The translations under genes and the position numbers were made by a program. Positions 19,748 through 59,359 of a stretch of 64,000 nt of DNA are shown piece after piece. This stretch comes from Geosiphon pyriformis uo1 (taxonomy: Eukaryota > Fungi > Glomeromycota), in the NCBI GenBank assembly GCA_016748015.1, contig JAAOMT010000439.1, forward strand, positions 145,527 through 209,526, in the 5' to 3' direction. The notes beneath the pieces were generated by a model. The model searched no databases and was not told where the DNA came from. It was given only the letters and a program-made list of their open reading frames with translations. Each line of letters begins with the position of its first letter. Position 1 is the stretch's first letter.

Positions 19748-20825
19748 CCTAATTTTCAAAATAAATACTAAACCAAAAAACAGCATATGGCTAACTTAAT
19801 TAAATTTAAAAATATTTTTGTTAGAAAATATTAACAATGACAGAGCTGATGTTTTCATAAGTGTTATAATACAATTTGGTGTTTTTTATTTATTAGTGTA
19901 TATAAGAGATTTATCTTAACAGATAGTTTAATTGTTTTAAACAATGTTTACTATTTTGTTTGTAATATATATTAAACAGTTAGTTAGGCTTAATAAAAAG
20001 CAGATTTAAGTATAGAAATTTTACAAAATTTTTTCATTTAAAACATTAATTGAAACTGTATTGCTTTAGTTTGGTATTTTAATTTCTATATGTTTTTTGG
20101 TTTTACTAACAGACTTTTAATAGTTTTTTGTATGTATTTAATAAAAGCAGTTTATAAAAAACTGTCAATTACAATTAGAAAGAGACTATTTAACAAAAAG
20201 TACTCAAATATGTTGTATTTGTTTTGTAGTAATATTAAACTGTCTAATCATGTTTTTATTTATTTAAAAAATGCTTTGATATGCTTTAAAATTTTGTTAA
20301 ATTATGTTAAATTATAAAAGTTTTTAATAAGATCTTGTTTTTTATCAACTTTTTTGTATACTTTCTTTTTAAAAGCATTTGATATTGACATTTATAAAGT
20401 TCTGTGCAAGAGATTTGTTTTTAGGAATTAGATTAGTAAAGCAATATTAAGATTTGAAAATAAAAAAAAGACTATAATAATAATGACCAATTTTGTCTAA
20501 TATTTTGCTAATATGTATTATAATAGACTGTAAAATTTTAGGTTGAAATATAGAGTTAATATGAAAAAAAGTGGTTTAGTTTATCTGTTTGGAATTGTTG
20601 AATTTTTTGCTGTTAGTTTTGAATTGTGCAAAACTTATTTGTTTTTTTCAGATTTAGATAATAGTTTAGAAGTTAATATAAATATATAGTGTAGTCTTAA
20701 TTGGCTTAAGTTGCCAGTCATATATAATAAGTATATGAGTTATATTTAATTTAAATTACTTAGTTTGTTTTTGTATATTAAATAATAATTAGACTGCATT
20801 CATTAATAAATAATAATAATAATAA
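19748..20825 (+). pseudogene. LINE ORF2 3' end relic (RNase H end, C-terminal zinc knuckle), possible (TAA)n tail
   Basis: PNFQNKY*TKKQHMANLI..., VWYFNFYMFFGFTNR...YLIKAVYKKLSITIRKRLFNKKYSNMLYLFCSNIKLSNHVF is a transition-decayed form of a recalled LINE ORF2 end (VWHPDxHMxxGFT...KALHxxLPVAVRKRLY..YP..LCL.C.....DHVF.C). Confidence 0.65.
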
Positions 20826-21267
20826 AATTCTAATTTTTTTTTGATAAATAATAAAGTAATTTTTGAAAATACTTATTATTTTATAAAAAATTTGTTTAAG
20901 TTAATAAATTTTGCCAGTTAAAAAACCAAATATGCCAATAAATTTATTGATAAGTTTTTAGTAATTTAATAAACATTTGAAAATTGATTTATTAAATTAC
21001 AATATTACTGATTTTTATATTTAGTTATTTAGTGTAAAAAAAAGTTTTATTGTTTTTTTTTTCTTGAAAAAACCGAAATACATATGTTCTACTCAATGAA
21101 AATTTAATTTGCTATTTTATTGTGCTCATCCTTGGGTTCAAAACATTATTATTCTCGGGTTTTCGTTAATGTTTGAATATTCAAATTGATATATATGGTT
21201 GAAGTTGGAAAGCAAGATAAAAATTCCTTTATTGTGTATATCCGAATATGGCAAACAAGAATAACTC

Positions 21268-22800: not shown

Positions 22801-23043
22801 GGTGAACAGAAAAGTTCGGGCAACTTGATAAGCTAGCGCGTTGATTCAAATTTTCACCATCGAAAATTTATTTCAGTAGAATTTAAATACGCATGTCTGG
22901 GATCTGAACACAAATTTTCCCCATCTAGTTCTGGCCAAAATAAATAACCCATTAAACAATTTTAATTCCTTGCAGATTTGTGCAGTAGAATTTTCACCTT
23001 TACCTCTTCTTGTACGCAAGCTTCTTCGAAGTTCGAGTATTCG

Positions 23044-24438
23044 ATGTCTCAAACCACCACACCAGTGCCCGCTCAGAATCACCACCCTCAAACTTTACCG
23101 TTGAGAATACTGGCTATTGGAACGGCATACGAAGACACTATTCTTTATGTGGATAAATTTCCTCCAGAAGACGGCAAACAGCGAGCCCAACGAGTAGAAA
23201 AACGACGGGGCGGAAACGCTGGCAATACGTTGACAGTGTTATCCCAGTTTCCAATAACACTGTCTTTTTTCATGGCTTCCATGGCTTCAAAGGAAGCTTC
23301 CACGTGAGTTATAAAATGATTGGGATATTTAATTCATGGACCTTAAGCAGCAATTTTCACCGTATTTACATCCGGATCGTCTTGTATTTACACCAACATC
23401 AATTTTTAAAAAAATATCATCATAATAATTTTTTTACTTAAAATTGTTGGGCAGTTTCTTGTTACAAGACTTCGAGGCGCATAATATAAACACTTCAACC
23501 TGCATTTTCAGATCGAATGCAACCCATGCCCCAGTAGCGTACATAATTCACGCAGATAATACAAGTTCACGGACTATCATAAATTATAATAGGTAATGTG
23601 ATGGAAAATGGCCATTCTATCGAGCTTAAGCAAGATATTACTCTGGTCATTTGGGAGATTGTATTATTTTCTTATTTTCTTAATACTGCTTTCAAAGTAT
23701 AATGATCAATTCCCAACTTTTAATCTTACCAAGTATTCATGATTATTTAAAGCATAGACGAACTGACATTTGAAGAGTTTGAACGAGAATTTGAAGCTTC
23801 ATGTGCTGAGGCTTTGTCAAATGATCCCAACAATGGTTTACCTTTTAATTGGATACATTTTGAAGGCAGGAACACAGAAGAAGTAGCCAAGATGATTGAT
23901 TTTATTGATGGAAAATCATGGCGGAATAAATGTATTATTAGCGTAGAATTGGAAAAGCCACATCGAAGGGGACTTGAGAATTTAATGCACCGGGGAGATG
24001 TGGTATTTTTCTCCAAAGTATTCGCCGAAGGAAAAGGATATGATCATCCAGGGGATTTCTTACAAGTGATGGGACCATATTGTAAAAAAACGTGAGTTTC
24101 TTCTTTACTTAATAATCTAATATTTTAGTGGCATTTACTAGTCCTAATCGTTGTTTCTTCTCTCAAGAGCTTACCTTTTCTGTACTTGGGGGAGTGCTGG
24201 GGCTTCATGTTATCATAACCCTACACGTAAGCTATGTAATGCACCTGCATTAGCAATTTCTAATGTGCTTGATTCAGTTGGAGCAGGTGACACTTTTATA
24301 GCTGGAGTAATATATGGTTTGACACAGGGAATGCCACCTGAAGGTTGTCTCCGATTTGCTTGTGAACTGGCTGGTCGTAAATGCGCGCAAGTTGGATTTG
24401 AAAAGGTTGTAGAGAAAATGAATCAGTTAAACTTTTGA
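23044..24438 (+). CDS. PfkB-family carbohydrate kinase, ketohexokinase-like (4 exons)
   Basis: RRGGNAGNT, WIHFEGRN, SVELEK, DSVGAGDTFIAG, KCAQVGF. Confidence 0.92.
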
Positions 24439-25233
24439 CTATATGGCTGGAAATACCAACCAGAACCTTTCAAAGAAACAATGGAACTCAGAAAAGAAGA
24501 TGAATATGAAGATGAAGAATTTTTACAACAAAAAGATCAAAGAATTCAAATGGGTCAAGAAAAAAGACAACAGCAAGATTTCATGCAAAAGCAAATACAA
24601 ACAACACGGCCAAAAGATTATGAAAATTTACAATCGCCAACCAAAGAAAAACGAGGGTGGTTGACGATGCAGTGGCCATTGAAAAGAATTAATAAAACTT
24701 CAAATACTAGTTCTAAATCAGAAACCGCATGGTATTTAAGCTGGATGCGAATGGCGGGAAAGAATTTTGGGACTGCAAAGGGTAAAACAAGTCAAAATTC
24801 GCCTGAATTTGACAGTAGAAAGGGCAAAGGAAAAAAACATACAGAAAAAAACCTAGAACAGCAAGATAATCATAAAGATGAACTTGAAAATTATTTTGAT
24901 GAAAACGATTTGCACAAGGAAGGGGAATCTAAAGAATATGGAGAGGAATCTGAATACACTGATGAATATGTGGATGAAACAGAAGATGACAATCATTTTA
25001 ATAATGATCCTAGAGAAATTGCTTATAATAGGGTGAACTTTATCAATCAAGAAAGGAATAGTGTTTTTGATGGCGGAGGCGTTATGCAATCATTTGCGAA
25101 GACGGATGATTTTTATCGCTACAATTTTGGAATAAATAGTTTCAGAGATTCGACCGTTTCATCTTCAAGTGCGAAGAGCAATAATAATATTACCGCTGAG
25201 ACAAAAATCTCGAACAGAGGAAAGTCTACTTAG
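24439..25233 (+). CDS. Open frame directly continuing the kinase frame; candidate readthrough extension (or separate 250 aa ORF from ATG 24481)
   Basis: Same frame as the last kinase exon, 264 sense codons after TGA-CTA; acidic and Lys-rich low-complexity sequence. Confidence 0.7.
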   Translation, partial: LYGWKYQPEPFKETMELRKEDEYEDEEFLQQKDQRIQMGQEKRQQQDFMQKQIQTTRPKDYENLQSPTKEKRGWLTMQWPLKRINKTSNTSSKSETAWYLSWMRMAGKNFGTAKGKTSQNSPEFDSRKGKGKKHTEKNLEQQDNHKDELENYFDENDLHKEGESKEYGEESEYTDEYVDETEDDNHFNNDPREIAYNRVNFINQERNSVFDGGGVMQSFAKTDDFYRYNFGINSFRDSTVSSSSAKSNNNITAETKISNRGKST

Positions 25234-25596
25234 AAAGATGAAATCTTGATTTCGGTACTACTAGTCTTTAAACCCCATTCTGTATTCTTGTTTACCTGGA
25301 ACATTTACCCATCTAAATATGACTAGGATGCTTCTGTTATATAATCGCAAATTAGATCAAGGTGAAGATCAAATAAATTTTAATCAGCTCTGGAGCTATC
25401 ACGATCCTTCATAAAAAAGAAAAAAGTTCAGGTATTCTCTGCACTTCTAAAATTGTTTGGAAACCATCAGATGCGAAAATAAATCCAATTTCGTGACAGA
25501 AACCCTTTATGTGTAAATGTTTCGAGCATCGATCAACAAGAGTGATTGCTTGAAACGAGTAGAATATAAACAACTTTAACATTATTAAATTCTAGA

Positions 25597-27018
25597 TTAT
25601 AAATTCCCACTCCCATTATCATCTAATAATTCGTGTAGACATCTGAGCAATTGATGATTCTGTTCTGGAGTGCCAACGGTGATCCGTATACATCCTTTAC
25701 AACCGACCTCAGTACCACGATATCTAACCACAATTCCCAACCTCTCGGCCAACTCTGTGTATACCCAGAGAGCACGTTCATTACTTGGTGTGCCACTTTT
25801 GGCATCCAAGATTTGAACTAGTAAAAAATTCGTGTCTTTGCCTCCAATAATTTTCCCAATACCAGATATTTTTTTAATATTGAAGGTGATTTTATTTCGT
25901 TCAGAAAGAATTAACGAGATTGTCTCACGCGTTTTTGAGATATTTTCATCGGAAAGGGCAGAAAGAGCGGCTTTAGAAGTGAGTGTGCTGATGTTGTAAG
26001 GGGCTTTTACATTATTCATTAAACGAATAATCTTTGGATTAGATATTGCAATCCCACATCTGCACCGAATAGATCAGTCTCAAGATGTTAAAATCCTATT
26101 CGTACTTGATAGCTGGGGATCGGTAAAAAAAATTAAATCCGAAATACCTGATTCCTGCCAGCCCAAAACTTTTACTTAAGGTTTGGATCACAACTAAATT
26201 TGGGTATCGTTCTACCCATTTTGCCACGCTTCCAAAGGTCCCATTGAGATTTTCAGTAAAATCTATATAAGCTTCGTCTACAGCCACAACACCCTTTAAA
26301 TTTGGATCTTCGAGAACAGATTTGATCGAAGATAGAGATAAAGCATTGCCAGTGGGATTTCCTGGAGAACATAGGAAAACGATTTTTACATCAGAATTTT
26401 CAGATAAAGCCTTCGAAATCTTTTGTTTGTTTCGGAAAATATAAAAAAAAGTTTCGTTAGCGAATAAAATATATTGGATTCAAATAGATTCGAAAGTTTA
26501 GTTGAAGTTAAAAATATTAGACGAAGATTTGCATAAACTAGTTTCAAGGATTTTACCTGATTTATCTCTAATTGAAAATCTTCATTTACATTCAAATTTA
26601 CTCTGATCACTTTAACATCATTAACCTGTGCTGTTACCGAGTACATCCCATAGGTGGGAGGCGTAACCAAAACTTTATCTTTCCCAGGCACACAAAAAAT
26701 CCGAAACAACCAATCGATAACTTCATCTGAACCAACCCCTAAAAAAAAATAATCAGTTGAGGGTAGTTCCCGAAGTTTCATCAACCGTTCTTTCACTAGG
26801 ATCTGATTCGGATCAGGATATCGATTTAGGTGATCATCTATGGGTGTCAAAGTGGGGTTATGAAATTGAGTTTCGTCAAGTGAGGGACCAAACGAGTTTT
26901 CATTCGCGTCTAAAAGAATTCCTGAGGAATAATCTTCACGTGCACATCGATATGGTTTGACCGCTAGTATATTGGGCCGCACAATTGACTCTAAAGAAAA
27001 GGCGGATAAAGAAGACAT
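25597..27018 (-). CDS. HIS5: Histidinol-phosphate aminotransferase (3 exons)
   Basis: LLDANENS, NRYPDP, GVGSDE, CSPGNPTG, VDEAYIDF, TLSKSFGLAGIR, RITVGT. Confidence 0.96.
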
Positions 27019-28803: not shown

Positions 28804-29328
28804 AATTAAAAATTAAGGTTTCTACGTTGAAAAGAAGATATCGACTTTTTGAAGGGGTTTAATAACTGATCAAACTATTAAATTCTCGAATTTCTGAGTT
28901 ATCTGATAATCCGTTATCCCGGGATCACCGCATTTAGAGAAAACTAGGTAATGTCAATAGCTTTACAATCGATTTTATTCATCTAAATATGTAAATTATC
29001 TACATTAAAAGATAGCTTTTAATTTTTTCAAAAGGCCATTTTCAATTTTAAGGAAAAATTTGAAAAAGGAAAATAATTTTCCAGCTCGAAATCAATTTGA
29101 ATTTCTTAAATCCAATTTATTTTAAAAGAAATTATTTTTTCACACGTTTTTAACATTGATGTTTAGCATGGTTTGGAAATCTAAAAATAAAAACAACATG
29201 TTATCATTTTAAAAAAAAAACTTTGAAATTAAATAACGATAATTTTTTAACATTATTTCAGTATTGATAATTTGAATTTATATTTGTTGCATTATTATTT
29301 AAATGTGTTTTAATTTAATAATAACAAT

Positions 29329-29330
<2 letters not shown>

Positions 29331-29420
<90 letters not shown>
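29331..29420. repeat. (AAT)30 microsatellite
   Basis: Perfect trinucleotide run. Confidence 0.95.
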
Positions 29421-29860
29421 TAAATTATATCAAGCATCAATTTTGAAACAAAATTTCTGGCTATTTGGATAAGCCATTTGTAATTTTCCTTTTGCCTTGA
29501 AATCTCCAGTATCAATTAAAAGTTGCATATTTGATTTCAAAGCCTAAAAATTAAAAAATCAGATTTCAAATCAATATTTCAAACATTCTACAAATGAGAG
29601 GTCCTCGGTTTTCTATCCAATGCGAGCCTATATGCTCAACAATAGATTTTCTTGGTAATTTCAAACATTTTTTTTATCACTCATCCGTAGCTAAAAAATA
29701 GAGTGCAAAGAAAATATCTGTCTAACTAAAGCAATGCTCAATATCTGCTAAAAATTCATTCAAAATAAATTGATGAGAAGTAGCAAGCAAAATGAAAAAT
29801 TTAATTTAAAGATGTATTCAAAAACGATTATAATTCGTTATAATATGTCAAAAGGGCCTT

Positions 29861-34002: not shown

Positions 34003-36762
34003 ATGTTCTCCCAAAGAAATCCAGTTTCCACTAGTCTTTTGACCCAACCTTTTCATCCTTCCATGCCTGAGGATCAGCTCAACAATCTTCAAGTAAATCT
34101 AGAGAATTCTCACCAGCAATCACATCAGCAACAAAATCAATATAATAATGGTCAAGAATTATTGTCAGACCAACTGAAATTTCAAATTCTACAAGGATAC
34201 GGTCTAAATCCAACTGTATATGCTGGTCAATCACTCGATGATAGTGTTATACCTAATTCTTTATATACAGGTGATTTCACAATTGGATACCATAATGATG
34301 ACATAAATCAAATGGGGGAAGTTCCTGATTTTGGAGGTACCCTCTTCTTTAGCGATTTAGCTTCGGAAAATCTTTCGGAAAGTTCATGGTTGATTGATTC
34401 AGTAACTACATCACCACCACAACACCAAGATTTTGAGAAACAGGATCAACAACAACATCAACAACAGATCTCACAGTCCTTGTCAAGTCTACCTTTACAA
34501 GGCCATCCTCAACTTTCACATCCTCCTGTCTCATCAATGCTAACTTATAATAATGACCAAGTTCCTAATCGTGCTCAAACTCCTGGTCCTTTTCCTCGAA
34601 GCATACCAAATTATTTGACCGCTCGTCGTCGAAGTTTATCCGCTGACAATATACACGCACTAGCAAAAAATCACGCCAATGCAAACCGTAAAATCTTACT
34701 AAATGCTCAATCACAAAATTTTGAACAAATCTCTTCGGCTGATCGACCTCCTTTTTATCGTGACACTATTTCTACTACGTCAGTTGGAGAATATACAAAT
34801 CAGAATCAATACTCTAATCCGATGATTAAGAATGAAGAGGAGCAAGAAATGATGCAAAGTGTTATCAATCAAACTATATTGCATGGAAATTCTATTTCCA
34901 GTAATATGTCTCTTGAGAATCACCATCATCATCATCATCATCACCACCATCAACAATCAAATATTGATAGTGATGTACAAAGTATTGATAGTAATGACGA
35001 AAATCAATCATTAACAAACTTGCAGTCCAGAGCTCAATTGATTAATGAACCTATTAATCATACTCAGAGGTTAAATGAACGACAGGCTAGATTTAAAGTT
35101 AAAATTGATAGGAGAGTTCCAAGAAATATTCCTAGCATTCAAGTACCAAATTCGACACCTGGAATATGTAGCCCAATGAATGCAATCATACCTGCAGGGC
35201 CTTTTCCTATAACAATGCCTTCTATGGAAATGCCAATTTCAATGTCTACACCTAATACTCCTACCTTTTCACCCCAAATACCAAATATTAATATCGTGCC
35301 GACTTCATCCCCAACAAATAATCCAAATAATTTAAATAATCCAAATAACAACAATAAACTTAGTGCTGCTCGTCGTGGTGGTCATATGCGCAAACGTTCT
35401 TTATCTGCGCCTACTCAACCTTTTGGTTTAACAGGGGCTATGCCCTTGCAACCCGCTCAATCTTTTCCATTTAACATATCTTCTGTTTCCCCATCATTTC
35501 GAAGGCCTGGCGCTGTTCCTATACAAATTCAACGAAATCACAAACATTCTCATACGGCTACACCAATGTCATCCGAAGAGTATCAACGTAAATTAAATGA
35601 AGAACTGGAAAAAATCGATTTCGAAGATATTACCGTGAGCGAACTAAAGGATATGTTAAGACAACGTGGAAAACCTGCTACCGGTAAAAAGGCTGTACTG
35701 ATGCAAAGGTTACAGGATGAATATGAGGCGGTAAAAGCAATGAAACAAAATAATCTACAAAAGCCTCAAATCAATACCAACGCTAATTTTAGTAACAACA
35801 ATAATCAATATAATCCAATCTTATCTTCACCAACATCACCTTCTGGTGGATCATTACATCGTAGTATTGCTAATATGCATATCTCAAGTCCACCTGTTCA
35901 TCAAAGACGTTTCAGCCCTTATGGAAGTGTTAGTATTCCAAATAGTCCTAGATTAATACCGACTGGGATGGGTAATAATCGTGCAACTTCGACATATAAC
36001 AATGGAGTATTCCCATTTTCAGCTGGTGTAGATGAGTGGCATTTTAATAGCGTTGGTATTGTTCATCATCCCAGTTACGGGTCTCAACAATTAGCTCAAA
36101 TGGAAGAAAATGGCCCAATGCTTCATCCAATGATGATGATTGAACCATCATCACCATCACAACAACAACAACAACAACCCACACTTCAATCACAGTCACA
36201 ATCCCACGGGGCACAGCAACAGCAACAACAAAATGAAAAATTTTTCATAATGCAACAACCTTCTTCAGCTCCTTCAACAACTACTGAATTCGACACATTT
36301 CAGGAACCGCCATCATCTGCTCCTGCAACAACTACCGAGTTTGAGTCATTTCAACAACCACCCTCCTCTGCTCCTCCAATGACAACCGAGTTTATGAATA
36401 CCTACGACTTTATGCGTTCAAATTCAATGGGTGGCATAACGATGAACATGAATGAAGAGATCTTGAGAATGAATATGGGCACCCAAACAAATATTAACAA
36501 TATCCTTTTAAAACAAAAACCAGGTGATACAAAAGATAACCCACTCCAATCTTCAACTCCTGGGATGATCTCGTCACAAGAATTAGGATTTGAGTATCAA
36601 GAGCATCATCAAATGAGTATCAAGCCTGTATTTGAATTTAATCAAGCTCCCACGGGATATATGTCAATGACAAATCCTGCTCAATCGCAGCATCAACTTG
36701 AACTTCATCAAGTGCAATTACAACAACAGCAACATCAAAGCTCTTTTGGTAGTGGATGGTGA
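34003..36762 (+). CDS. 919 aa SAP-domain low-complexity protein, putative transcriptional regulator, single coding exon
   Basis: ITVSELKDMLRQRGKPATGKKAVLMQRL SAP motif; poly-Q/H/N tracts; RRRSLS and RKRSLS. Confidence 0.88.
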   Translation: MFSQRNPVSTSLLTQPFHPSMPEDQLNNLQVNLENSHQQSHQQQNQYNNGQELLSDQLKFQILQGYGLNPTVYAGQSLDDSVIPNSLYTGDFTIGYHNDDINQMGEVPDFGGTLFFSDLASENLSESSWLIDSVTTSPPQHQDFEKQDQQQHQQQISQSLSSLPLQGHPQLSHPPVSSMLTYNNDQVPNRAQTPGPFPRSIPNYLTARRRSLSADNIHALAKNHANANRKILLNAQSQNFEQISSADRPPFYRDTISTTSVGEYTNQNQYSNPMIKNEEEQEMMQSVINQTILHGNSISSNMSLENHHHHHHHHHHQQSNIDSDVQSIDSNDENQSLTNLQSRAQLINEPINHTQRLNERQARFKVKIDRRVPRNIPSIQVPNSTPGICSPMNAIIPAGPFPITMPSMEMPISMSTPNTPTFSPQIPNINIVPTSSPTNNPNNLNNPNNNNKLSAARRGGHMRKRSLSAPTQPFGLTGAMPLQPAQSFPFNISSVSPSFRRPGAVPIQIQRNHKHSHTATPMSSEEYQRKLNEELEKIDFEDITVSELKDMLRQRGKPATGKKAVLMQRLQDEYEAVKAMKQNNLQKPQINTNANFSNNNNQYNPILSSPTSPSGGSLHRSIANMHISSPPVHQRRFSPYGSVSIPNSPRLIPTGMGNNRATSTYNNGVFPFSAGVDEWHFNSVGIVHHPSYGSQQLAQMEENGPMLHPMMMIEPSSPSQQQQQQPTLQSQSQSHGAQQQQQQNEKFFIMQQPSSAPSTTTEFDTFQEPPSSAPATTTEFESFQQPPSSAPPMTTEFMNTYDFMRSNSMGGITMNMNEEILRMNMGTQTNINNILLKQKPGDTKDNPLQSSTPGMISSQELGFEYQEHHQMSIKPVFEFNQAPTGYMSMTNPAQSQHQLELHQVQLQQQQHQSSFGSGW

Positions 36763-37637: not shown

Positions 37638-40295
37638 ATGGTCTATCATAAAGCCATCGTCAAGTCAGTCCTCTCTGGTGATACTGTAATTCTTCGTGGC
37701 AAAGCCAATCAATCAACACTTGAAAAACAGTTGAGCCTTGCTTATGTCGAGGCACCAAGATTGAAATTGGGGCCAAACTCAAAGACTGACGATGAGCCTT
37801 TTGCGTTCGACTCTCGTGAATTTCTTCGTCGTTTACTTGTCGGAAAGGAAGTTTCTTTTTGCATTGCCTATACTACCCCCAATTCGAGGGAGTATGGTAG
37901 CATATTTCTTAATAATGGCGAAAACGTTACCTTTCAAGCCTTACGAGAAGGTTGGGTGAAAGTACGTGAGCGGAAAAATAAAGGTGATTCGTCAGTAGAC
38001 GAACTTGAGGTACTTTCGGTAATTGAAAAAGCCGCTCAAGATGCCCAAAAAGGTATATGGGGTGATAAGGAAAAAGCCTCACGCGTTGTAAATTACAATT
38101 TACAAGGTGATACGGCAGATTTCCTCAAAAAATACAAGAAAACTCCCATTAATGGTATCGTGGAACAAGTACGTGACGCTTCTACCTTACGCGTTCTTCT
38201 CTTGCTCGAGCCTCCTGAGCCACAACAACATATTAGCCTCATGCTCTCGGGGGTTAAGGCTCCCACTGTACGCAAGGGGATCCCAGATGCGGAGGATCTC
38301 GTTGAACCTTTTGGGGAGAAAGCAAAATTTTTCGTTGAATCTAAATTATTGCAACGAGATGTCAAAGTAATATTAGAAGGACAATCGGGCAACAATCAAG
38401 CCTTGGTCGGAACGGTATTGCTTCCAGGTTCTAATATTGCTGAAGATTTGGTGTCGAATGGATTAGCCAAGGTGGTTGATTGGAGCATTATGTTGGTCAC
38501 GGATGGTCCAGTAAAATTAAGAACTGCTGAAGCAGTCGCCAAAGAGCAGAGGTTGGGAATTTGGGAGGATCATGTGGCAAGGAGTAAAGCAGGTGGTGAA
38601 GACCATGAATTTGATGGGATCGTTACAAAAATTATTTCCGGAGACACTCTTCAGATTAAGGTCATTCGTTCTGGTGTCGAAAAGAAGCTGCAGTTATCTA
38701 GTATACGTCAACCGAAACCTAAAGATCCAAAAGTACCAGAGTATAATTATGAAGCCAAAGAGTTTCTTCGTAAAAGACTAATCGGAAAAACTGTTCACGT
38801 GATTATTGATTACGCGAAACCACCGCAGGATAATTTCGAAGAGCGTGAATGTGCTACCGTCAAACTAGGGGAAACTAATATTGCTGAGAAATTAGTTGAG
38901 AATGGGCTGGCTCATGTTGTTCGCCATAAAAAAGATGACGAAGATCGCTCTAGTTCTTACGATCAATTATTAATCGCCGAGCAAAAGGCCATTAATAACG
39001 CTAAAAGGATTCACAATGGAAAAGAACCACCTGTATATAAAATCAGTGATGCATCCGAGACAGCTGCCAAAGCTCGTCAATTTCTTCACTCTTTTCAACG
39101 TAGCGGTCGTATTGCGGCAATGGTTGATCATGTAGCAAATGGTTCAAGATTTAAAATATACATTCCGAAAGATAATTGCAAATTGACATTCCTTCTTAGT
39201 GGTATTCGTTGTCCTCGACTTGGTCGTTCTTCCTCTGAGAAATCGGAGCCATTTGCCCTTGAAGCGGTTGAATTTGCCAACCATAAAACATTACAACGCG
39301 ATGTAGAAATCGAAATCGAAAATGTTGACAAAACTGGCGGATTTATTGGAACTCTTTGGTTAAATAAATCCGAAAATTTTGCTGTTTCACTTTTAGAGGA
39401 AGGACTTTCAACAATTCACGAATACAGTGCCGATCAAAGCCCCTATACCAATCAGCTTTATGGGGCTGAGAAATCTGCAAAAGCTAGTCGAAAAAATATT
39501 TGGTCACAAGATCCTGATTCCGTGCAAGTTGGTGAAGATCTACCCGCTTCAGAAGAGAAAGAACCTCAGAAAGAATATGTGGATGTGATTGTTTCCGAGA
39601 TACTCTCTGGTGGACATTTCTATGTTCAAATCATGGAAGGAAGCGTTCATGCGCTTGAAAGATTGATGTCAGAATTTTCACTCTATCACAAAAATTCCGC
39701 CGATAATTCGCATGAGCAATTCCAACCTCGAGTCAATGAAATTGTGAGCGCTAAATTCACCGAGGACGATCAATGGTATCGTGCTCGAATCAAAGGTTTT
39801 TCTCCCGAGGCAAAAACTGTTGATGTTACATATATTGATTACGGTAATGGTGAGACTATACCATTGTCACGTACTCGTCCTATACCTCCCAATTTTTCAC
39901 AACTCCCACCACAATCACACGAGGCAGTCCTCTCCTTTCTTAAGGTTCCCGCGAAAGAAGAAGATTATGGTGAAGAGGCCTATGAGCGATTTCGCGATCT
40001 TGCTCATAACAAACAATTAGTGGCAAATATTGATTTTGTTGATAACAAAGTGCGTCATCTCACCTTATACGATCCGAGGATATCTCAATCTCCGGAGATG
40101 TCTCTCAATGCAGAATTGGTACGTGATGGCTTGGCTCTGGTAGATAAAAAATTACGATACGTCAGAGTTAATTCGAGCATTGTTAAAAAGTTAAGCGAAG
40201 CTCAAGAACAGGCCAAGAAAGATAGGCTTGGAATGTTTGAGTATGGCGATGTTACCGTTGATGAGGATGAGGATAAGGTTAAGCGAAAATATTAA
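37638..40295 (+). CDS. SND1: Tudor staphylococcal nuclease (Tudor-SN/p100), intronless
   Basis: VKSVLSGDT, repeated SNase domains (EPFA..REFLR), Tudor AKFTEDDQWYRA...YIDYGNGE, C-terminal GMFEYGD. Confidence 0.96.
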   Translation: MVYHKAIVKSVLSGDTVILRGKANQSTLEKQLSLAYVEAPRLKLGPNSKTDDEPFAFDSREFLRRLLVGKEVSFCIAYTTPNSREYGSIFLNNGENVTFQALREGWVKVRERKNKGDSSVDELEVLSVIEKAAQDAQKGIWGDKEKASRVVNYNLQGDTADFLKKYKKTPINGIVEQVRDASTLRVLLLLEPPEPQQHISLMLSGVKAPTVRKGIPDAEDLVEPFGEKAKFFVESKLLQRDVKVILEGQSGNNQALVGTVLLPGSNIAEDLVSNGLAKVVDWSIMLVTDGPVKLRTAEAVAKEQRLGIWEDHVARSKAGGEDHEFDGIVTKIISGDTLQIKVIRSGVEKKLQLSSIRQPKPKDPKVPEYNYEAKEFLRKRLIGKTVHVIIDYAKPPQDNFEERECATVKLGETNIAEKLVENGLAHVVRHKKDDEDRSSSYDQLLIAEQKAINNAKRIHNGKEPPVYKISDASETAAKARQFLHSFQRSGRIAAMVDHVANGSRFKIYIPKDNCKLTFLLSGIRCPRLGRSSSEKSEPFALEAVEFANHKTLQRDVEIEIENVDKTGGFIGTLWLNKSENFAVSLLEEGLSTIHEYSADQSPYTNQLYGAEKSAKASRKNIWSQDPDSVQVGEDLPASEEKEPQKEYVDVIVSEILSGGHFYVQIMEGSVHALERLMSEFSLYHKNSADNSHEQFQPRVNEIVSAKFTEDDQWYRARIKGFSPEAKTVDVTYIDYGNGETIPLSRTRPIPPNFSQLPPQSHEAVLSFLKVPAKEEDYGEEAYERFRDLAHNKQLVANIDFVDNKVRHLTLYDPRISQSPEMSLNAELVRDGLALVDKKLRYVRVNSSIVKKLSEAQEQAKKDRLGMFEYGDVTVDEDEDKVKRKY

Positions 40296-44181: not shown

Positions 44182-46316
44182 ATGATGTTAATTCCCGGAT
44201 TTAGTTCCTTTTCTAATCTCCCTTTTTTAGTGTCGTGCAGGTTACTGAGAACCTCAACTTTTTACAAGATGAACGTATTAATTTACACTGGTCTAGGTAC
44301 TTCCTCTTTATCAGTATCCAACACTATTGATACTTTGAAAAATGTACTTGGGAACCACTACGATATTATCAGAGTAAATTCTCAAATTTTACGGGATGAA
44401 CCTTGGTCTGATAGCACTGCTTTGATTGTCATACCAAATGGAAAATTTCTAAAGTATCATGATGAAATAAAGGATGTGGTGAATGAAAAAATCAGGAATT
44501 ATATTAATAATGGTGGAAAGTACCTTGGTTTTGGAGCTGGCGCAAATTACCCCTCTACTCAAATTTTTAATTCCCATTATCAGGATGAATCTATTCATTT
44601 CCAACCTTTTGTGAAATTGGAATTGACTCATCAAGTTTTAAATAATTATAACCCGAGATTACCAAAGGAAATCAGTTTAACTTTGCCTTCAAATGAGCTT
44701 GCTGATCAAGTTATTGGCTACTTTGACGTTTCTGAAACGAATCCACATATTACAACCCTTGCTAAATACAAGAATAACACAAATCTAGGATGTGGAAATG
44801 CAGCTGCCATTGTTCAATATAGCATGGGAAAAGGCATTGGGATACTTAGTGGAGTTGATCTTGGGCACGAACCATCAACTGACCTTCAAAATGATTCACC
44901 TATTATTTATGCTTTGGGTAAAGGTGAACTTTTACGTAGGATCCTTGGAATTTTGGGATTGGCCATGACCACGGTAGATACAAAAATCTCAAAGATAACA
45001 CATTTACATGCATCATTTCAAAGAACTGCATTAGCTGATTTATGGTTACGCTCAGTAAATGATATAATAAAAAAAGAAGACAGTTTAATCAAAGAAAATC
45101 AAGAAATTATTTTAATCATTCAAGATAATACCTTGCCTATACAAAATAAAGGTGAAATCAAAGGTGACCAAGATCCTCAATCAACACTCACCAAGATTAT
45201 TGTTCATCGTGATGAACCACCTTCCAGAAAGATAACACCTTTTTTTGATTTTAATGAATATTTTAAATATTTGAGTAAAGCAAGAAATGAACAAATTGAG
45301 TCTCATCATATGGAATTCGGTTCTTCTGTATTGTATGGTGAAGTGATGGGAAGCACACAATCATTTCTAGACAAGTAAGTTAACTTTTCTTTACTACCCC
45401 CCGTCTTGAATTTATTACGATTGATTCAATTAAGAAATTTTTTTGATAAAATACGAAATAGAAATTTTCAATTTTCAAAAATCCAACCAACAGGTTTAGT
45501 TTGTGTAGCCACTCAACAAATCCAAGGTCGTGGTCGTGGTCGTAATTCATGGATCTCACCTATGGGATGTTTACAATTTTCGGTAGTAGTTCGACATCCG
45601 ATACATATTCCTTCATCATCTGTCGTTTTTATTCAATATATTTTGGCGTTAGCAGTGGTGGAAGCTGTTAGATCTAAAAAAGGCTATGAAGAGATTCCAC
45701 TAAAACTTAAATGGCCAAATGATATCTACGCTCAAATATCTTCATTTTCTTCTTCAACCGATCATGTTGATGATCCAAAGTTGGTAAAGATTGGTGGTGT
45801 TTTGATTACTTCTCAATTTGTCGGAAATCAATTTTTGATAATTGCTGGTAGGTTTATTTCTCTTGAACTTTGTTTTTCAATTCGATTTAAAAAATAGTAA
45901 TAATAATAATAATAATTTATAACTGTAAATTTAGGATGTGGTGTGAATACAAATAATTCGGCCCCTACAATCTCGATCAATGATATCATATCAAATTATA
46001 ATAAAACTCATCAAACCGAATTACCAATTTTCTCTCAAGAAGAATTGTTATCACGAATTCTGGTAAAGTTTGAATCAATTTACATTGGATTTTGTAATGA
46101 TACTATTAATGGTCAACCAGGATTTCATCGATTCCTGGAATTATATTATAAAAGATGGCTACATAGGTGTGTTTATTTCAAAAATTTTCTTTGTTTATTT
46201 CATTTTATTTTATTTTAAACTCTCTTATGATTCGGTTTTAATGAAATTTCTAGTAATCAAATTGTTAACATACAAGCTGGCGCAGTTATTTATAACCACG
46301 ATAATATTTATAACAA

Positions 46317-57895: not shown

Positions 57896-59359
57896 ATGAA
57901 CTTGCAAATTCAGAATCGAAAGTGTGTGAATTTGTACTTGGCGATGTTTTCGCTCTTGTTCGTTCTGTTGGTAGCCCAACTGCCTAGCGTCAGTACAGAG
58001 GAGGGCAAACGACAGCAGTCATCAGAGTTCCACCATCAACCCACACACTTGGCAAGTGATTGCGCTCATCTAAAAGAATTAATAAAAGAGGGAAAACATC
58101 CTGGAATCAAGGATAGCAATATTTCTGGATGCCCACACTTTAGTCAATCATTAAAAAAAGAAATTCAAGATCAAAACAATGAAAACCACTCAAAAATTGA
58201 TCATATACGAATATGCCCTTATATCCAAGAATTAAATCGACAAAAACGCCACAGGCTTAGCATTGAGAGCAATTTTACAAAAACCGTTTTCGCCTTTCTT
58301 TTTCCTGGTAGCCCACGTGTAAATTCTTTATTGGCCACCTTCTATATCTCTTCCGTACCGAATTTTATATTATTCTTTGTACCACCAGATATACGTCCTT
58401 CCTCTCTCAATTCCCTTGTCAGTTTTGCTGTGGGTGGTTTACTTGGTGATGTATTCTTACATTTATTACCGCAATCTTTTTTGGGAGAAAATAATGATGA
58501 TCAAGTTCACTTTGTACAATTGGAAGAGAAGAAAAATGTCATAATTGGGCTAGCAATTTTTATTGGATTGACCTCATTTTTTGTAATTGACAAGTTTATG
58601 CGAATAGCCAGTGGTGGAGAAGAAAGTGGTCATTCTCATTCAAAGAAATTCGAGAAAAAAGATGATTCAATCACAACTGCAACACAGAATCGTGAAGATT
58701 CCAAATCACTTCGTCATCGTACATCTGAAAAGTCGAAAAAAGGTGATAAAAATTCTACAAAAGATCATCTCACCGATGACGATCAAGATCAGAATCTTAA
58801 AAAAGCCCCATCGACAAGCATTAAATTATCTGCCTATTTAAATCTTATTGCGGATGCAACCCATAATTTCACTGATGGCCTTGCCATGGCGGCATCATTC
58901 TATGCTTCGCCTAGTATTGGAGCCACAACCACAGTGGCAGTTTTTTTCCATGAAATCCCCCATGAAATTGGCGATTATGCTATTTTAATTCAAAGTGGTT
59001 TTACAAAACAATACGCTCTCCTCTCTCAGTTCGCTACGGCCATTGGGGCATTCCTTGGGACTTTGGCAGGAATTGCGATCGAAGAGATAAGTAGAAGTGA
59101 TGACATGAATGTTGGGAGTGAACATGTTACTTTATCTGGTGCTTACTCAGGGATTCTAGGGACGGGAGTACGTTTTAGTGACTTAGTTATTCCATTCACG
59201 GCTGGTGGTTTTTTGTATATTGCCACAGTCGGGGTTATTCCTGAATTATTGGAGGTTACCGGAAAGTTGAGCAAAGATCTCAAACAAGCTGGTATTGAAA
59301 TCCTAGCAATGTTTATTGGTGTAGGAATGATGGCAATTATAGCCTGGAATGAGGGTTAA
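57896..59359 (+). CDS. ZIP (LIV-1/ZIP7, Yke4-like) zinc transporter, intronless
   Basis: FAVGGLLGDVFLHLLP, LNLIADATHNFTDG, FFHEIPHEIGD, FTAGGFLY; N-terminal hydrophobic signal. Confidence 0.93.
   Translation: MNLQIQNRKCVNLYLAMFSLLFVLLVAQLPSVSTEEGKRQQSSEFHHQPTHLASDCAHLKELIKEGKHPGIKDSNISGCPHFSQSLKKEIQDQNNENHSKIDHIRICPYIQELNRQKRHRLSIESNFTKTVFAFLFPGSPRVNSLLATFYISSVPNFILFFVPPDIRPSSLNSLVSFAVGGLLGDVFLHLLPQSFLGENNDDQVHFVQLEEKKNVIIGLAIFIGLTSFFVIDKFMRIASGGEESGHSHSKKFEKKDDSITTATQNREDSKSLRHRTSEKSKKGDKNSTKDHLTDDDQDQNLKKAPSTSIKLSAYLNLIADATHNFTDGLAMAASFYASPSIGATTTVAVFFHEIPHEIGDYAILIQSGFTKQYALLSQFATAIGAFLGTLAGIAIEEISRSDDMNVGSEHVTLSGAYSGILGTGVRFSDLVIPFTAGGFLYIATVGVIPELLEVTGKLSKDLKQAGIEILAMFIGVGMMAIIAWNEG

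What the first reader, a model, noticed from the sequence alone, without database searches (positions are those of the whole stretch)
24436..25233. Candidate programmed UGA-CUA readthrough giving a ketohexokinase-like kinase a ~265 aa C-terminal extension
Seen: the kinase ends ...AAC TTT TGA CTA TAT GGC TGG and the same frame stays open for 264 more codons (LYGWKYQPEPFKET-MELRKEDEY...RGKST*). The downstream 250 aa ORF starts only 42 nt after the stop, leaving no room for a terminator plus promoter, and an 800 nt stop-free frame is unlikely by chance in AT-rich DNA. Known: UGA followed by CUA is the canonical leaky-stop context used for functional readthrough in fungi (cryptic peroxisomal enzyme isoforms) and animals. 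Unusual: those fungal extensions are typically short PTS1 tails, while this one nearly doubles the protein, has acidic tracts, Lys clusters and two Trp-rich segments (GWLTMQWPLKR, AWYLSWMRMAG), and ends in KST, not a PTS1. Inference: a regulated long isoform that relocalises or scaffolds a sugar kinase.
Basis: partly seen in the sequence, partly recalled or inferred. Interest (0 to 1): 0.88.

Follow-up and report, generated by a model that had tools for sequence, protein, structure and literature searches.

The report
Sugar kinase stop followed by orphan ORF
A complete ketohexokinase-like gene of the fungus Geosiphon pyriformis ends at an old, conserved TGA, and the 264 open codons behind it are a species-only orphan reading frame, so a conserved programmed readthrough extension is not supported, though a low-level Geosiphon-only fusion cannot be excluded.

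Summary
TGA 24436-24438 is followed by CTA, and the same frame stays open for 264 codons (chance about 2e-10). The frame is coding-like. Spliced cDNA contigs carry the TGA unchanged and run unspliced across it to 24675.

The organism is Geosiphon pyriformis. The kinase (335 aa, deposited as G9A89_011835) is complete at the TGA: human ketohexokinase ends 8 residues earlier, and 12 Glomeromycotina orthologues end within a few residues of it.

The 264-aa frame has no relative among 1.84 billion protein representatives and none elsewhere in its own genome. It is absent downstream of seven orthologous kinase loci. An eighth locus, a metagenome contig, ends 18 codons after the stop. Stop codons there vary, and Ambispora gerdemannii has a tandem TAG-TGA. 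The frame is predicted to be disordered, and NCBI holds it as a separate 250-aa protein.

The best reading is an ordinary kinase gene plus a taxonomically restricted orphan ORF that shares or overlaps its transcript. In-frame placement has about a 12% chance.

One real oddity remains. TGA-CTATATG is conserved in three distant lineages although synonymous sites are saturated. A Geosiphon-only readthrough fusion therefore remains possible (about 15%).

The scan has noted other TGA-CTA candidates on other DNA of this genome. None of them has been checked.

The parts
23044..23303 (+). Kinase exon 1 (ATG 23044); start of the PfkB domain
   Evidence: cDNA contig joint 23303>23455; Pfam PF00294 match; matches deposited protein P0122, 335 aa
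23455..23592 (+). Kinase exon 2
   Evidence: cDNA joints, GT..AG; splice sites read
23753..24091 (+). Kinase exon 3 (holds the WIHFEGRN motif)
   Evidence: cDNA joints; aligned with orthologues
24168..24438 (+). Kinase exon 4 with the GAGDTF motif, ending in TGA; the natural C-terminus of the enzyme
   Evidence: PF00294 E=5e-15; aligns to the last 80 residues of human ketohexokinase, which ends 8 aa earlier; 12 orthologues end at about the same place
24436..24445 (+). TGA CTATATG: the stop plus a 7-nt conserved 3' flank (UGA-CUA context; also holds an ATG in the +2 frame)
   Evidence: Identical in Ambispora gerdemannii and metagenome contig L002, while third codon positions are only 34-43% identical (P=0.003 and 0.0005); 5 of 7 in A. 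leptoticha
24439..24480 (+). 14-codon stop-free linker between the TGA and the ATG (LYGWKYQPEPFKET); the stretch that would tell readthrough from separate initiation
   Evidence: DNA homology with A. gerdemannii fades about 15 nt after the TGA
24481..25233 (+). 250-aa orphan ORF (P0001), in frame with the kinase; start context AAACAATGG
   Evidence: Held in NCBI nr as a separate protein; only self-hits in two protein searches; single copy in the genome; frame-0 codon periodicity like known genes; AF2 mean pLDDT 51
24680..25025 (.). Second RNA contig over the middle of the ORF, at about one fifth of the k-mer depth of the kinase contig (9.8 vs 46.3); no RNA laid on 25026-25500
   Evidence: tables 2 and 8. 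Contigs carry no strand and cannot show transcript ends.
24691..24696 (+). AATAAA hexamer inside the ORF, just past the end of the kinase RNA contig (24675); a possible poly(A) signal of a short kinase mRNA (inference only)
   Evidence: Read; contig ends

Best explanation
There are two coding units, not one recoded gene. (1) A four-exon ketohexokinase-like PfkB kinase of Geosiphon pyriformis (335 aa) terminates at an ancestral TGA that marks the natural end of the enzyme. (2) 42 nt downstream begins a Geosiphon-restricted, intrinsically disordered 250-aa orphan ORF, deposited as its own gene. This ORF lies in the kinase's 3' transcribed region. It is most likely translated, if at all, from its own ATG (A at -3, G at +4), on an overlapping or shorter transcript that starts inside or just after kinase exon 4. 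That it is in frame with an open linker is coincidence (about 12%). The UGA-CU(A) context is an inherited local sequence, also found in relatives that have no extension. Shown: gene structure, completeness of the kinase, presence of the TGA in RNA, lack of splicing across it, coding-like statistics, and absence of the ORF elsewhere. Inferred: a separate start of transcription and translation.
For: The kinase is complete at the TGA. Three introns and the unspliced TGA were confirmed in cDNA with 0 mismatches. NCBI holds the ORF as a separate 250-aa protein. phmmer of the 264-aa frame against 1.84e9 representatives found only itself, as did the word-based search. A metagenome scan found nothing. 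It is a single copy in the 128-Mb genome. tblastn of the extension against nine loci (eight orthologous genomic loci plus one Gigaspora RNA contig) gave no significant hit; the best was E=2.5. Open codons after the orthologous stops are 0, 10, 24, 19, 53, 9 and 9, and at least 18 up to the contig end in L002. The stops are TAG, TGA and TAA. A. gerdemannii has TAG immediately before the homologous TGA. There is no Pfam family, low language-model recognition, and pLDDT 51. There is no stimulatory RNA structure, z=-0.07. Codon periodicity of the ORF (0.31/0.22 nats per codon) matches known genes of the window at 0.27-0.32, and the start context resembles theirs. RNA k-mer depth drops from 46 to 9.8 at 24675/24680.
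Against: 42 nt leaves no ordinary promoter space, so a separate transcript must start inside the kinase gene, and no transcription start was observed. The one RNA data set shows a contig running continuously from the kinase CDS 237 nt into the downstream frame. UGA-CUA is an experimentally leaky context in fungi and animals (PMC4207609, PMC4359377), so some fusion product is expected if the mRNA carries the whole frame. The 7 nt after the stop are conserved across three lineages beyond neutral expectation, which this explanation leaves unexplained. The combination of TGA-CTA, an adjacent ORF, in-frame placement and an open linker is rare if the four are independent.
Confidence: 0.6

Rival explanations
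1. Geosiphon-specific functional readthrough. A few percent of ribosomes decode UGA-CUA with a near-cognate tRNA and append a 264-aa disordered tail to the kinase. Selection on that minor isoform keeps the frame open.
For: The UGA-CUA context is present in both DNA and RNA. The frame is open and coding-like, and the 14-codon linker is stop-free. The RNA contig is continuous over the stop. All four Archaeosporales-like sequences keep UGA-CU, and three keep CTATATG despite saturated synonymous sites. UGA CU(A)(G) is a proven leaky motif (PMC4207609, PMC12233894).
Against: The extension is not conserved in seven orthologous loci and has no homologue anywhere. A. gerdemannii has a tandem TAG-TGA, and both Ambispora species close the frame after 10 codons. 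Position +7 is U, not G. There is no downstream structure. There is no domain, PTS1 or other signal. RNA depth over the ORF is about a fifth of the kinase's, and none was laid on its last 208 nt. The ORF has its own good ATG.
Confidence: 0.15
2. The ORF is not translated at all. It would be a transcribed 3' UTR or intergenic stretch whose open frame is a relic or a young proto-gene, annotated only because it is long.
For: No homologue exists. Language-model recognition is low at 902. The frame is predicted disordered. The sequence is A-rich and of low complexity. RNA cover is low and incomplete. Synonymous codon choice is uninformative (-0.02).
Against: 264 open codons have P of about 2e-10, against 6-37 stops in the other frames. 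The position-specific composition and frame score are those of real genes. The start context is good.
Confidence: 0.17
3. A minor alternative splice removes the stop and fuses the kinase to the ORF, for example the reader's in-frame GT 24426 - AG 24491.
For: An in-frame GT/AG pair exists.
Against: The cDNA contig is unspliced there and no alternative joint was reported. The donor GTTAAA is unlike the gene's GTGAGT/GTAATG donors. Contigs do drop rare isoforms, so this is not excluded.
Confidence: 0.04
4. The TGA is an assembly error or a recent nonsense allele of a formerly longer kinase.
For: None found.
Against: RNA contigs agree with the genome at every base. The homologous TGA is present in A. 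leptoticha, A. gerdemannii and L002, and all orthologues end there.
Confidence: 0.02

Closest known systems
Functional translational readthrough at UGA CU(A)(G) (Ustilago Tpi1/Pgk1/Rpe1, human LDHB and MDH1; PMC4207609, PMC4359377, PMC12233894)
   Same: UGA followed by CUA; an in-frame open extension; a metabolic enzyme of sugar metabolism.
   Different: Known cases have short extensions (about 7-20 aa) that end in a PTS1, and both context and extension are conserved across species. Here the extension is 264 aa, disordered, ends in KST, is unique to one species, has its own ATG, and +7 is U rather than G.
Ketohexokinase / PfkB carbohydrate kinases (PF00294; human KHK structures such as 2hqq, 3nbv)
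   Same: Exon 4 aligns to the last 80 residues of human KHK (E=2e-15), with the GAGDTF motif; the WIHFEGRN motif is in exon 3; 67-82% identical orthologues occur across Glomeromycotina.
   Different: Nothing unusual in the kinase itself. Its substrate has not been tested, so 'ketohexokinase' is by similarity only.
Taxonomically restricted (orphan, possibly de novo) genes of fungi
   Same: No detectable homologue, disordered, A-rich, single copy, weakly expressed, sitting in a formerly non-coding flank. Relatives have unrelated sequence after the first ~15 nt past the stop.
   Different: It lies only 42 nt behind the upstream gene, in its frame, and behind a leaky-type stop.
Polycistronic or overlapping transcripts in fungi (PMC4503453)
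   Same: An RNA contig is continuous across two same-strand ORFs with a very short spacer.
   Different: Those were shown by full-length single-molecule reads in basidiomycetes. Here only short-read contigs exist, and they cannot prove a single molecule.

Membership tests
Programmed/functional stop-codon readthrough (UGA CUA G class) | UGA stop followed by CU(A), ideally with G at +7 | tested here: met
   TGA CTA TAT at 24436-24444 in DNA and cDNA. The core UGA CUA is met; +7 is U, so the extended motif is not.
Programmed/functional stop-codon readthrough (UGA CUA G class) | Extension and context conserved in related species (the criterion used in PMC4207609 to exclude chance cases) | tested here: not met
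   The context is kept in 3-4 Archaeosporales-like sequences. The extension is absent from seven orthologous loci and from 1.84e9 proteins. The eighth locus (L002) is cut 18 codons after the stop. A. gerdemannii has a tandem TAG-TGA.
Programmed/functional stop-codon readthrough (UGA CUA G class) | Extension carries a functional signal or domain (PTS1, NLS, membrane anchor and the like) | tested here: not met
   No Pfam family; ends in KST; AF2 pLDDT 51 with one helix; no Atlas look-alike.
Programmed/functional stop-codon readthrough (UGA CUA G class) | Readthrough product detectable (Ribo-seq, mass spectrometry, reporter) | not testable with these tools
   Only one RNA run, held as contigs; no ribosome profiling or proteomics available.
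Programmed/functional stop-codon readthrough (UGA CUA G class) | mRNA carries the whole extension on the same molecule as the upstream CDS | tested here: inconclusive
   One contig runs from the kinase ATG to 24675, a second covers 24680-25025, and nothing lies on 25026-25233. Contigs do not prove single molecules.
PfkB / ketohexokinase-like kinase | PF00294 domain with the C-terminal GAGD anion-hole motif, full length | tested here: met
   The deposited 335-aa protein P0122 has PF00294.
Orphan (taxonomically restricted) protein-coding gene | No homologue outside the species, yet coding-like and transcribed | tested here: met
   no homologue; open frame, codon periodicity; RNA over 24481-25025.
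Orphan (taxonomically restricted) protein-coding gene | Own transcription start and translation from its own ATG | not testable with these tools
   Logan contigs cannot show 5' ends. The start context AAACAATGG is favourable.

The most novel reading that the evidence does not exclude
An old leaky UGA-CU(A) stop context is conserved with a 7-nt flank in the ketohexokinase-like genes of Archaeosporales-like fungi. It has exposed the 3' UTR to translation. In Geosiphon alone this allowed a 264-codon disordered C-terminal extension, or a new gene, to arise de novo behind the stop. That would be a snapshot of protein extension and gene birth by readthrough, with the fusion isoform still being made.
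Probability: 0.12. Interest if true: 0.7.

Novelty: new member of a known kind. Interest (0 to 1): 0.33.

Why it matters
If the fusion were real, it would be by far the longest cellular readthrough extension in a fungus, and a rare view of how a leaky stop can seed new coding sequence. As the evidence stands, it is an ordinary, well conserved sugar-kinase gene followed by a species-specific orphan ORF. The useful results are threefold. The gene models and introns are verified by cDNA. A clear negative result on conservation lowers the readthrough claim. A small conserved element, TGA-CTATATG, sits right after the stop and deserves a reporter test. The case also warns that the TGA-CTA 'readthrough' candidates noted elsewhere in this genome need the same orthologue check before they are believed.

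Tried and rejected
**Homologues of the extension**
- The word-based search, the exhaustive phmmer search, the ESM Atlas, the JGI metagenome scan and the own-genome protein and DNA searches returned only the ORF itself.

**Fetching Geosiphon records**
- Look-ups by exact protein for P0001 and P0122 gave nothing. Records of the window's own genome are withheld there.

**Structure**
- The extension folded without an alignment had pLDDT 51. No fold search was run because the model is too poor.
- An RNA fold of the 100 nt from the stop showed nothing beyond shuffles.

**Other scans**
- The bacterial-type promoter/terminator scan is uninformative for a fungus.
- A synonymous-codon test could not discriminate, because codon bias is weak in this AT-rich genome.

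**Gene-model problems**
- The gene ends as annotated for Entrophospora and Acaulospora did not sit on the true stop. They were re-derived by tblastn.

**Hypotheses rejected**
- Assembly error or nonsense allele.
- A dominant intron over the stop.
- A TE-derived or repeated sequence.
- A truncated kinase.

- The joined (spliced) kinase protein was never sent to a search tool. Exons were searched by reference. For the family search they were aligned as separate rows to an intronless bacterial homologue (A1).
- Only one sequencing run was offered and read laying allows a single call, so raw-read questions (strand, 5'/3' ends, rare isoforms) could not be asked.

Full report
**1. What is in the sequence**

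The window reads AAC TTT TGA CTA TAT GGC TGG, with TGA at 24436-24438. The same frame stays open to TAG 25231-25233, which is 264 codons. An ATG at 24481 lies 42 nt after the stop and is in frame.

With the local base composition, the chance of 264 stop-free codons is about 1.8e-10. None of 20,000 shuffles exceeded 102 codons. The other five frames of the stretch hold 6-37 stops.

**2. Organism and gene models**

A neighbouring Tudor-SN ORF is 100% identical to Geosiphon pyriformis G9A89_011841. Geosiphon belongs to the Glomeromycotina, order Archaeosporales. The assembly is 128 Mb in 792 contigs.

The kinase is deposited as G9A89_011835 (P0122, 335 aa, PF00294). The 250-aa ORF from ATG 24481 is held in NCBI nr as a separate protein (P0001).

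**3. RNA evidence**

The only run offered, X1, is labelled 'probably DNA'. Its contigs are spliced, so it is cDNA.

| Contig | Length | k-mer depth | Window positions covered |
|---|---|---|---|
| 1 | 1247 nt | 46 | 23042-23303, 23455-23590(+2), 23751(+2)-24091, 24168-24675 |
| 2 | 346 nt | 9.8 | 24680-25025 |

- Contig 1 has no mismatch. Its joints are three GT..AG introns.
- It confirms exons 23044-23303, 23455-23592, 23753-24091 and 24168-24438. The exon lengths sum to 1008 nt, or 335 codons plus the stop.
- The TGA is present in RNA, and no intron removes it in the assembled form.
- Transcription continues at least 237 nt past the stop.
- Nothing was laid on 25026-25500.
- Contigs carry no strand and cannot show ends or single molecules. 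Contig 1 stops 2 nt before the kinase ATG, so contig ends here reflect coverage rather than transcript ends.
- An AATAAA sits at 24691-24696.

**4. The kinase is complete at the TGA**

- Exon 4 matches PfkB (E=5e-15).
- It aligns residue for residue to positions 219-298 of human ketohexokinase, the last residues of that 298-aa enzyme. Eight more residues follow before the TGA.
- Twelve Glomeromycotina orthologues are 67-82% identical. All end within a few residues of ...VEKMxxxx, and only Gigasporaceae add about 12 residues.
- No annotated orthologue has a long tail. The search could see proteins of up to about 1.75 times the query length.

**5. The downstream frame is coding-like but an orphan**

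- Its frame-0 codon pattern scores 0.31/0.22 nats per codon over the off-frame tables. That is the same as known genes of the window (0.27-0.32), and the shifted frames score negative.
- The start context AAACAATGG resembles the A-rich contexts of neighbouring genes.
- It has no Pfam family and no Atlas look-alike, with recognition 902.
- phmmer of all 264 residues against 1.84 billion representatives returned only itself. This search has no length filter, so fused homologues would have been seen.
- There were no metagenome relatives and no second copy in the genome.
- AlphaFold2 without an alignment gives pLDDT 51, with a single long helix.

**6. Orthologous loci**

The exons were searched by reference and never joined. 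For the family search they were aligned as separate rows to an intronless bacterial ketohexokinase-like ORF from a metagenome contig (A1).

The genomic loci of the orthologues were then fetched. True stops were located by tblastn.

| Organism | Stop and following bases | In-frame open codons after the stop |
|---|---|---|
| Geosiphon | TGA CTATATGGC | 264 |
| Ambispora gerdemannii | TAG TGA CTATATGGT | 0 (10 more codons after the second stop) |
| Ambispora leptoticha | TGA CTGCATGAT | 10 |
| Funneliformis caledonium | TAA | 24 |
| Gigaspora margarita (genome and RNA contig) | TGA AAA | 19 |
| Acaulospora morrowiae | TAA | 53 |
| Diversispora eburnea | TGA TCT | 9 |
| Entrophospora sp. | TAA | 9 |
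| Metagenome contig L002 (71% identical in exon 4, same introns) | TGA CTATATGAT | at least 18, where the contig ends |

- tblastn of the extension against all these loci found nothing; the best hit was E=2.5.
- DNA similarity to A. gerdemannii fades about 15 nt after the TGA.
- The extension is therefore confined to Geosiphon as far as data exist. The stop codon is not a conserved leaky one across the subphylum. The closest relative carries a tandem stop, which is an anti-readthrough arrangement.

**7. A small real signal**

Third codon positions of exon 4 are only 34-43% identical between Geosiphon and A. gerdemannii, A. leptoticha or L002, so they are saturated. Yet the 7 nt after the TGA (CTATATG) are identical in A. 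gerdemannii (P=0.003) and in L002 (P=0.0005), and 11 of the first 12 match in A. gerdemannii. A. leptoticha keeps 5 of 7.

All four keep UGA-CU, the minimal leaky element of PMC4207609, and an ATG at +5 to +7. Three explanations are possible, and I could not separate them:

- a stop-context constraint;
- a 3'-end processing or RNA-binding element, since UAUAU-type efficiency elements are known from yeast (my own knowledge, not tested);
- the start of a small +2-frame ORF (73 aa in Geosiphon, 22-27 aa in Ambispora, with no convincing peptide similarity).

No RNA structure follows the stop (z=-0.07).

**8. Weighing the explanations**

Given an adjacent same-strand ORF, being in frame (1/3) with 14 stop-free linker codons (about 0.36) has about a 12% chance. 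TGA-CTA is expected by chance at roughly 0.5% of genes, by my estimate from base composition.

The scan's notes list several other TGA-CTA candidates in this genome. None is checked, which fits a look-elsewhere effect.

- **Against plain coincidence:** 42 nt leaves no promoter space, and the RNA is continuous over the junction.
- **For readthrough:** UGA-CUA gives percent-level readthrough in fungi and human cells (PMC4207609, PMC4359377, PMC12233894).
- **Against readthrough as a selected mechanism:** there is no conservation, no signal in the tail, U at +7, an own ATG, and lower and incomplete RNA cover.

My estimates are:

| Explanation | Probability |
|---|---|
| Two units, with separate or no translation of the ORF from the kinase | about 0.6 |
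| Untranslated relic or proto-gene | about 0.17 |
| Geosiphon-specific functional readthrough | about 0.15 |
| Minor splice isoform | about 0.04 |
| Assembly error or nonsense allele | about 0.02 |

Overlapping or polycistronic transcripts are known in fungi (PMC4503453) and would accommodate the short spacer.

**9. Verdict**

The locus is a candidate worth one reporter assay or one Ribo-seq look at the 42-nt linker, but it is not evidence of programmed readthrough. I rate the novelty as a new member of known kinds: an orphan ORF behind a conserved gene, and a leaky-type stop context. Interest is modest.

Noticed in passing
window 24436-24450; L069 2197-2217; L002 1208-1220; L068 5188-5200: TGA-CTATATG(G) immediately after the kinase stop is conserved in Geosiphon, Ambispora gerdemannii and an unidentified metagenome relative, although synonymous sites are saturated. 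A. leptoticha keeps UGA-CU and the ATG. The function is unknown: stop context, 3'-end element or small-ORF start.
   Followed up: partly
L069 2197-2202: Ambispora gerdemannii has a tandem stop TAG-TGA where Geosiphon has TTT-TGA. This is either a real extra stop or an error of a single-nucleus assembly.
   Followed up: no
window 24443-24664 (+2 frame): A 73-aa Lys-rich ORF starts at the conserved ATG 5 nt after the kinase stop and overlaps the orphan ORF. It is most likely just the off-frame reading of A-rich DNA.
   Followed up: partly
L003 3383-4258; L006 174-1139; one search list: Intronless bacterial ketohexokinase-like PfkB genes (Burkholderiales, Gammaproteobacteria; many in metagenomes) share the WIHFEGRN and DSVGAGDTF motifs with the Glomeromycotina enzyme (36-45% identity). 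No tree was made of the relationship between the fungal and bacterial clades.
   Followed up: no
window 25597-27018 (- strand): A convergent class I/II aminotransferase gene (histidinol-phosphate aminotransferase-like, PF00155) with at least two introns ends 364 nt downstream of the orphan ORF. Synteny downstream of the kinase differs in both Ambispora species (ATP synthase delta; Det1).
   Followed up: partly
window 34003-36762, 37638-40295, 44182-45378, 57896-59359: Long single-exon ORFs: a SAP-domain protein, Tudor-SN (SNase x4-5 plus Tudor), a biotin-protein ligase N-terminal part, and a ZIP zinc transporter. They were used here only as a codon-usage reference and for identifying the organism.
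   Followed up: partly
window 20000-21000 and 29000-29500: Blocks of 17-19% G+C next to the 33-40% G+C gene island. This fits the repeat or RIP-like stretches noted by the scan on this window (s1-505917).
   Followed up: no
same genome, other pieces (scan notes s1-495481, s1-495637, s1-509250): Other first-reader notes propose TGA-CTA readthrough for a SepH/Cdc7 kinase (267 codons), a NIPA transporter (83 aa) and CTK3. A genome-wide count of TGA-CTA stops and their 3' open frames would show whether there is any excess.
   Followed up: no
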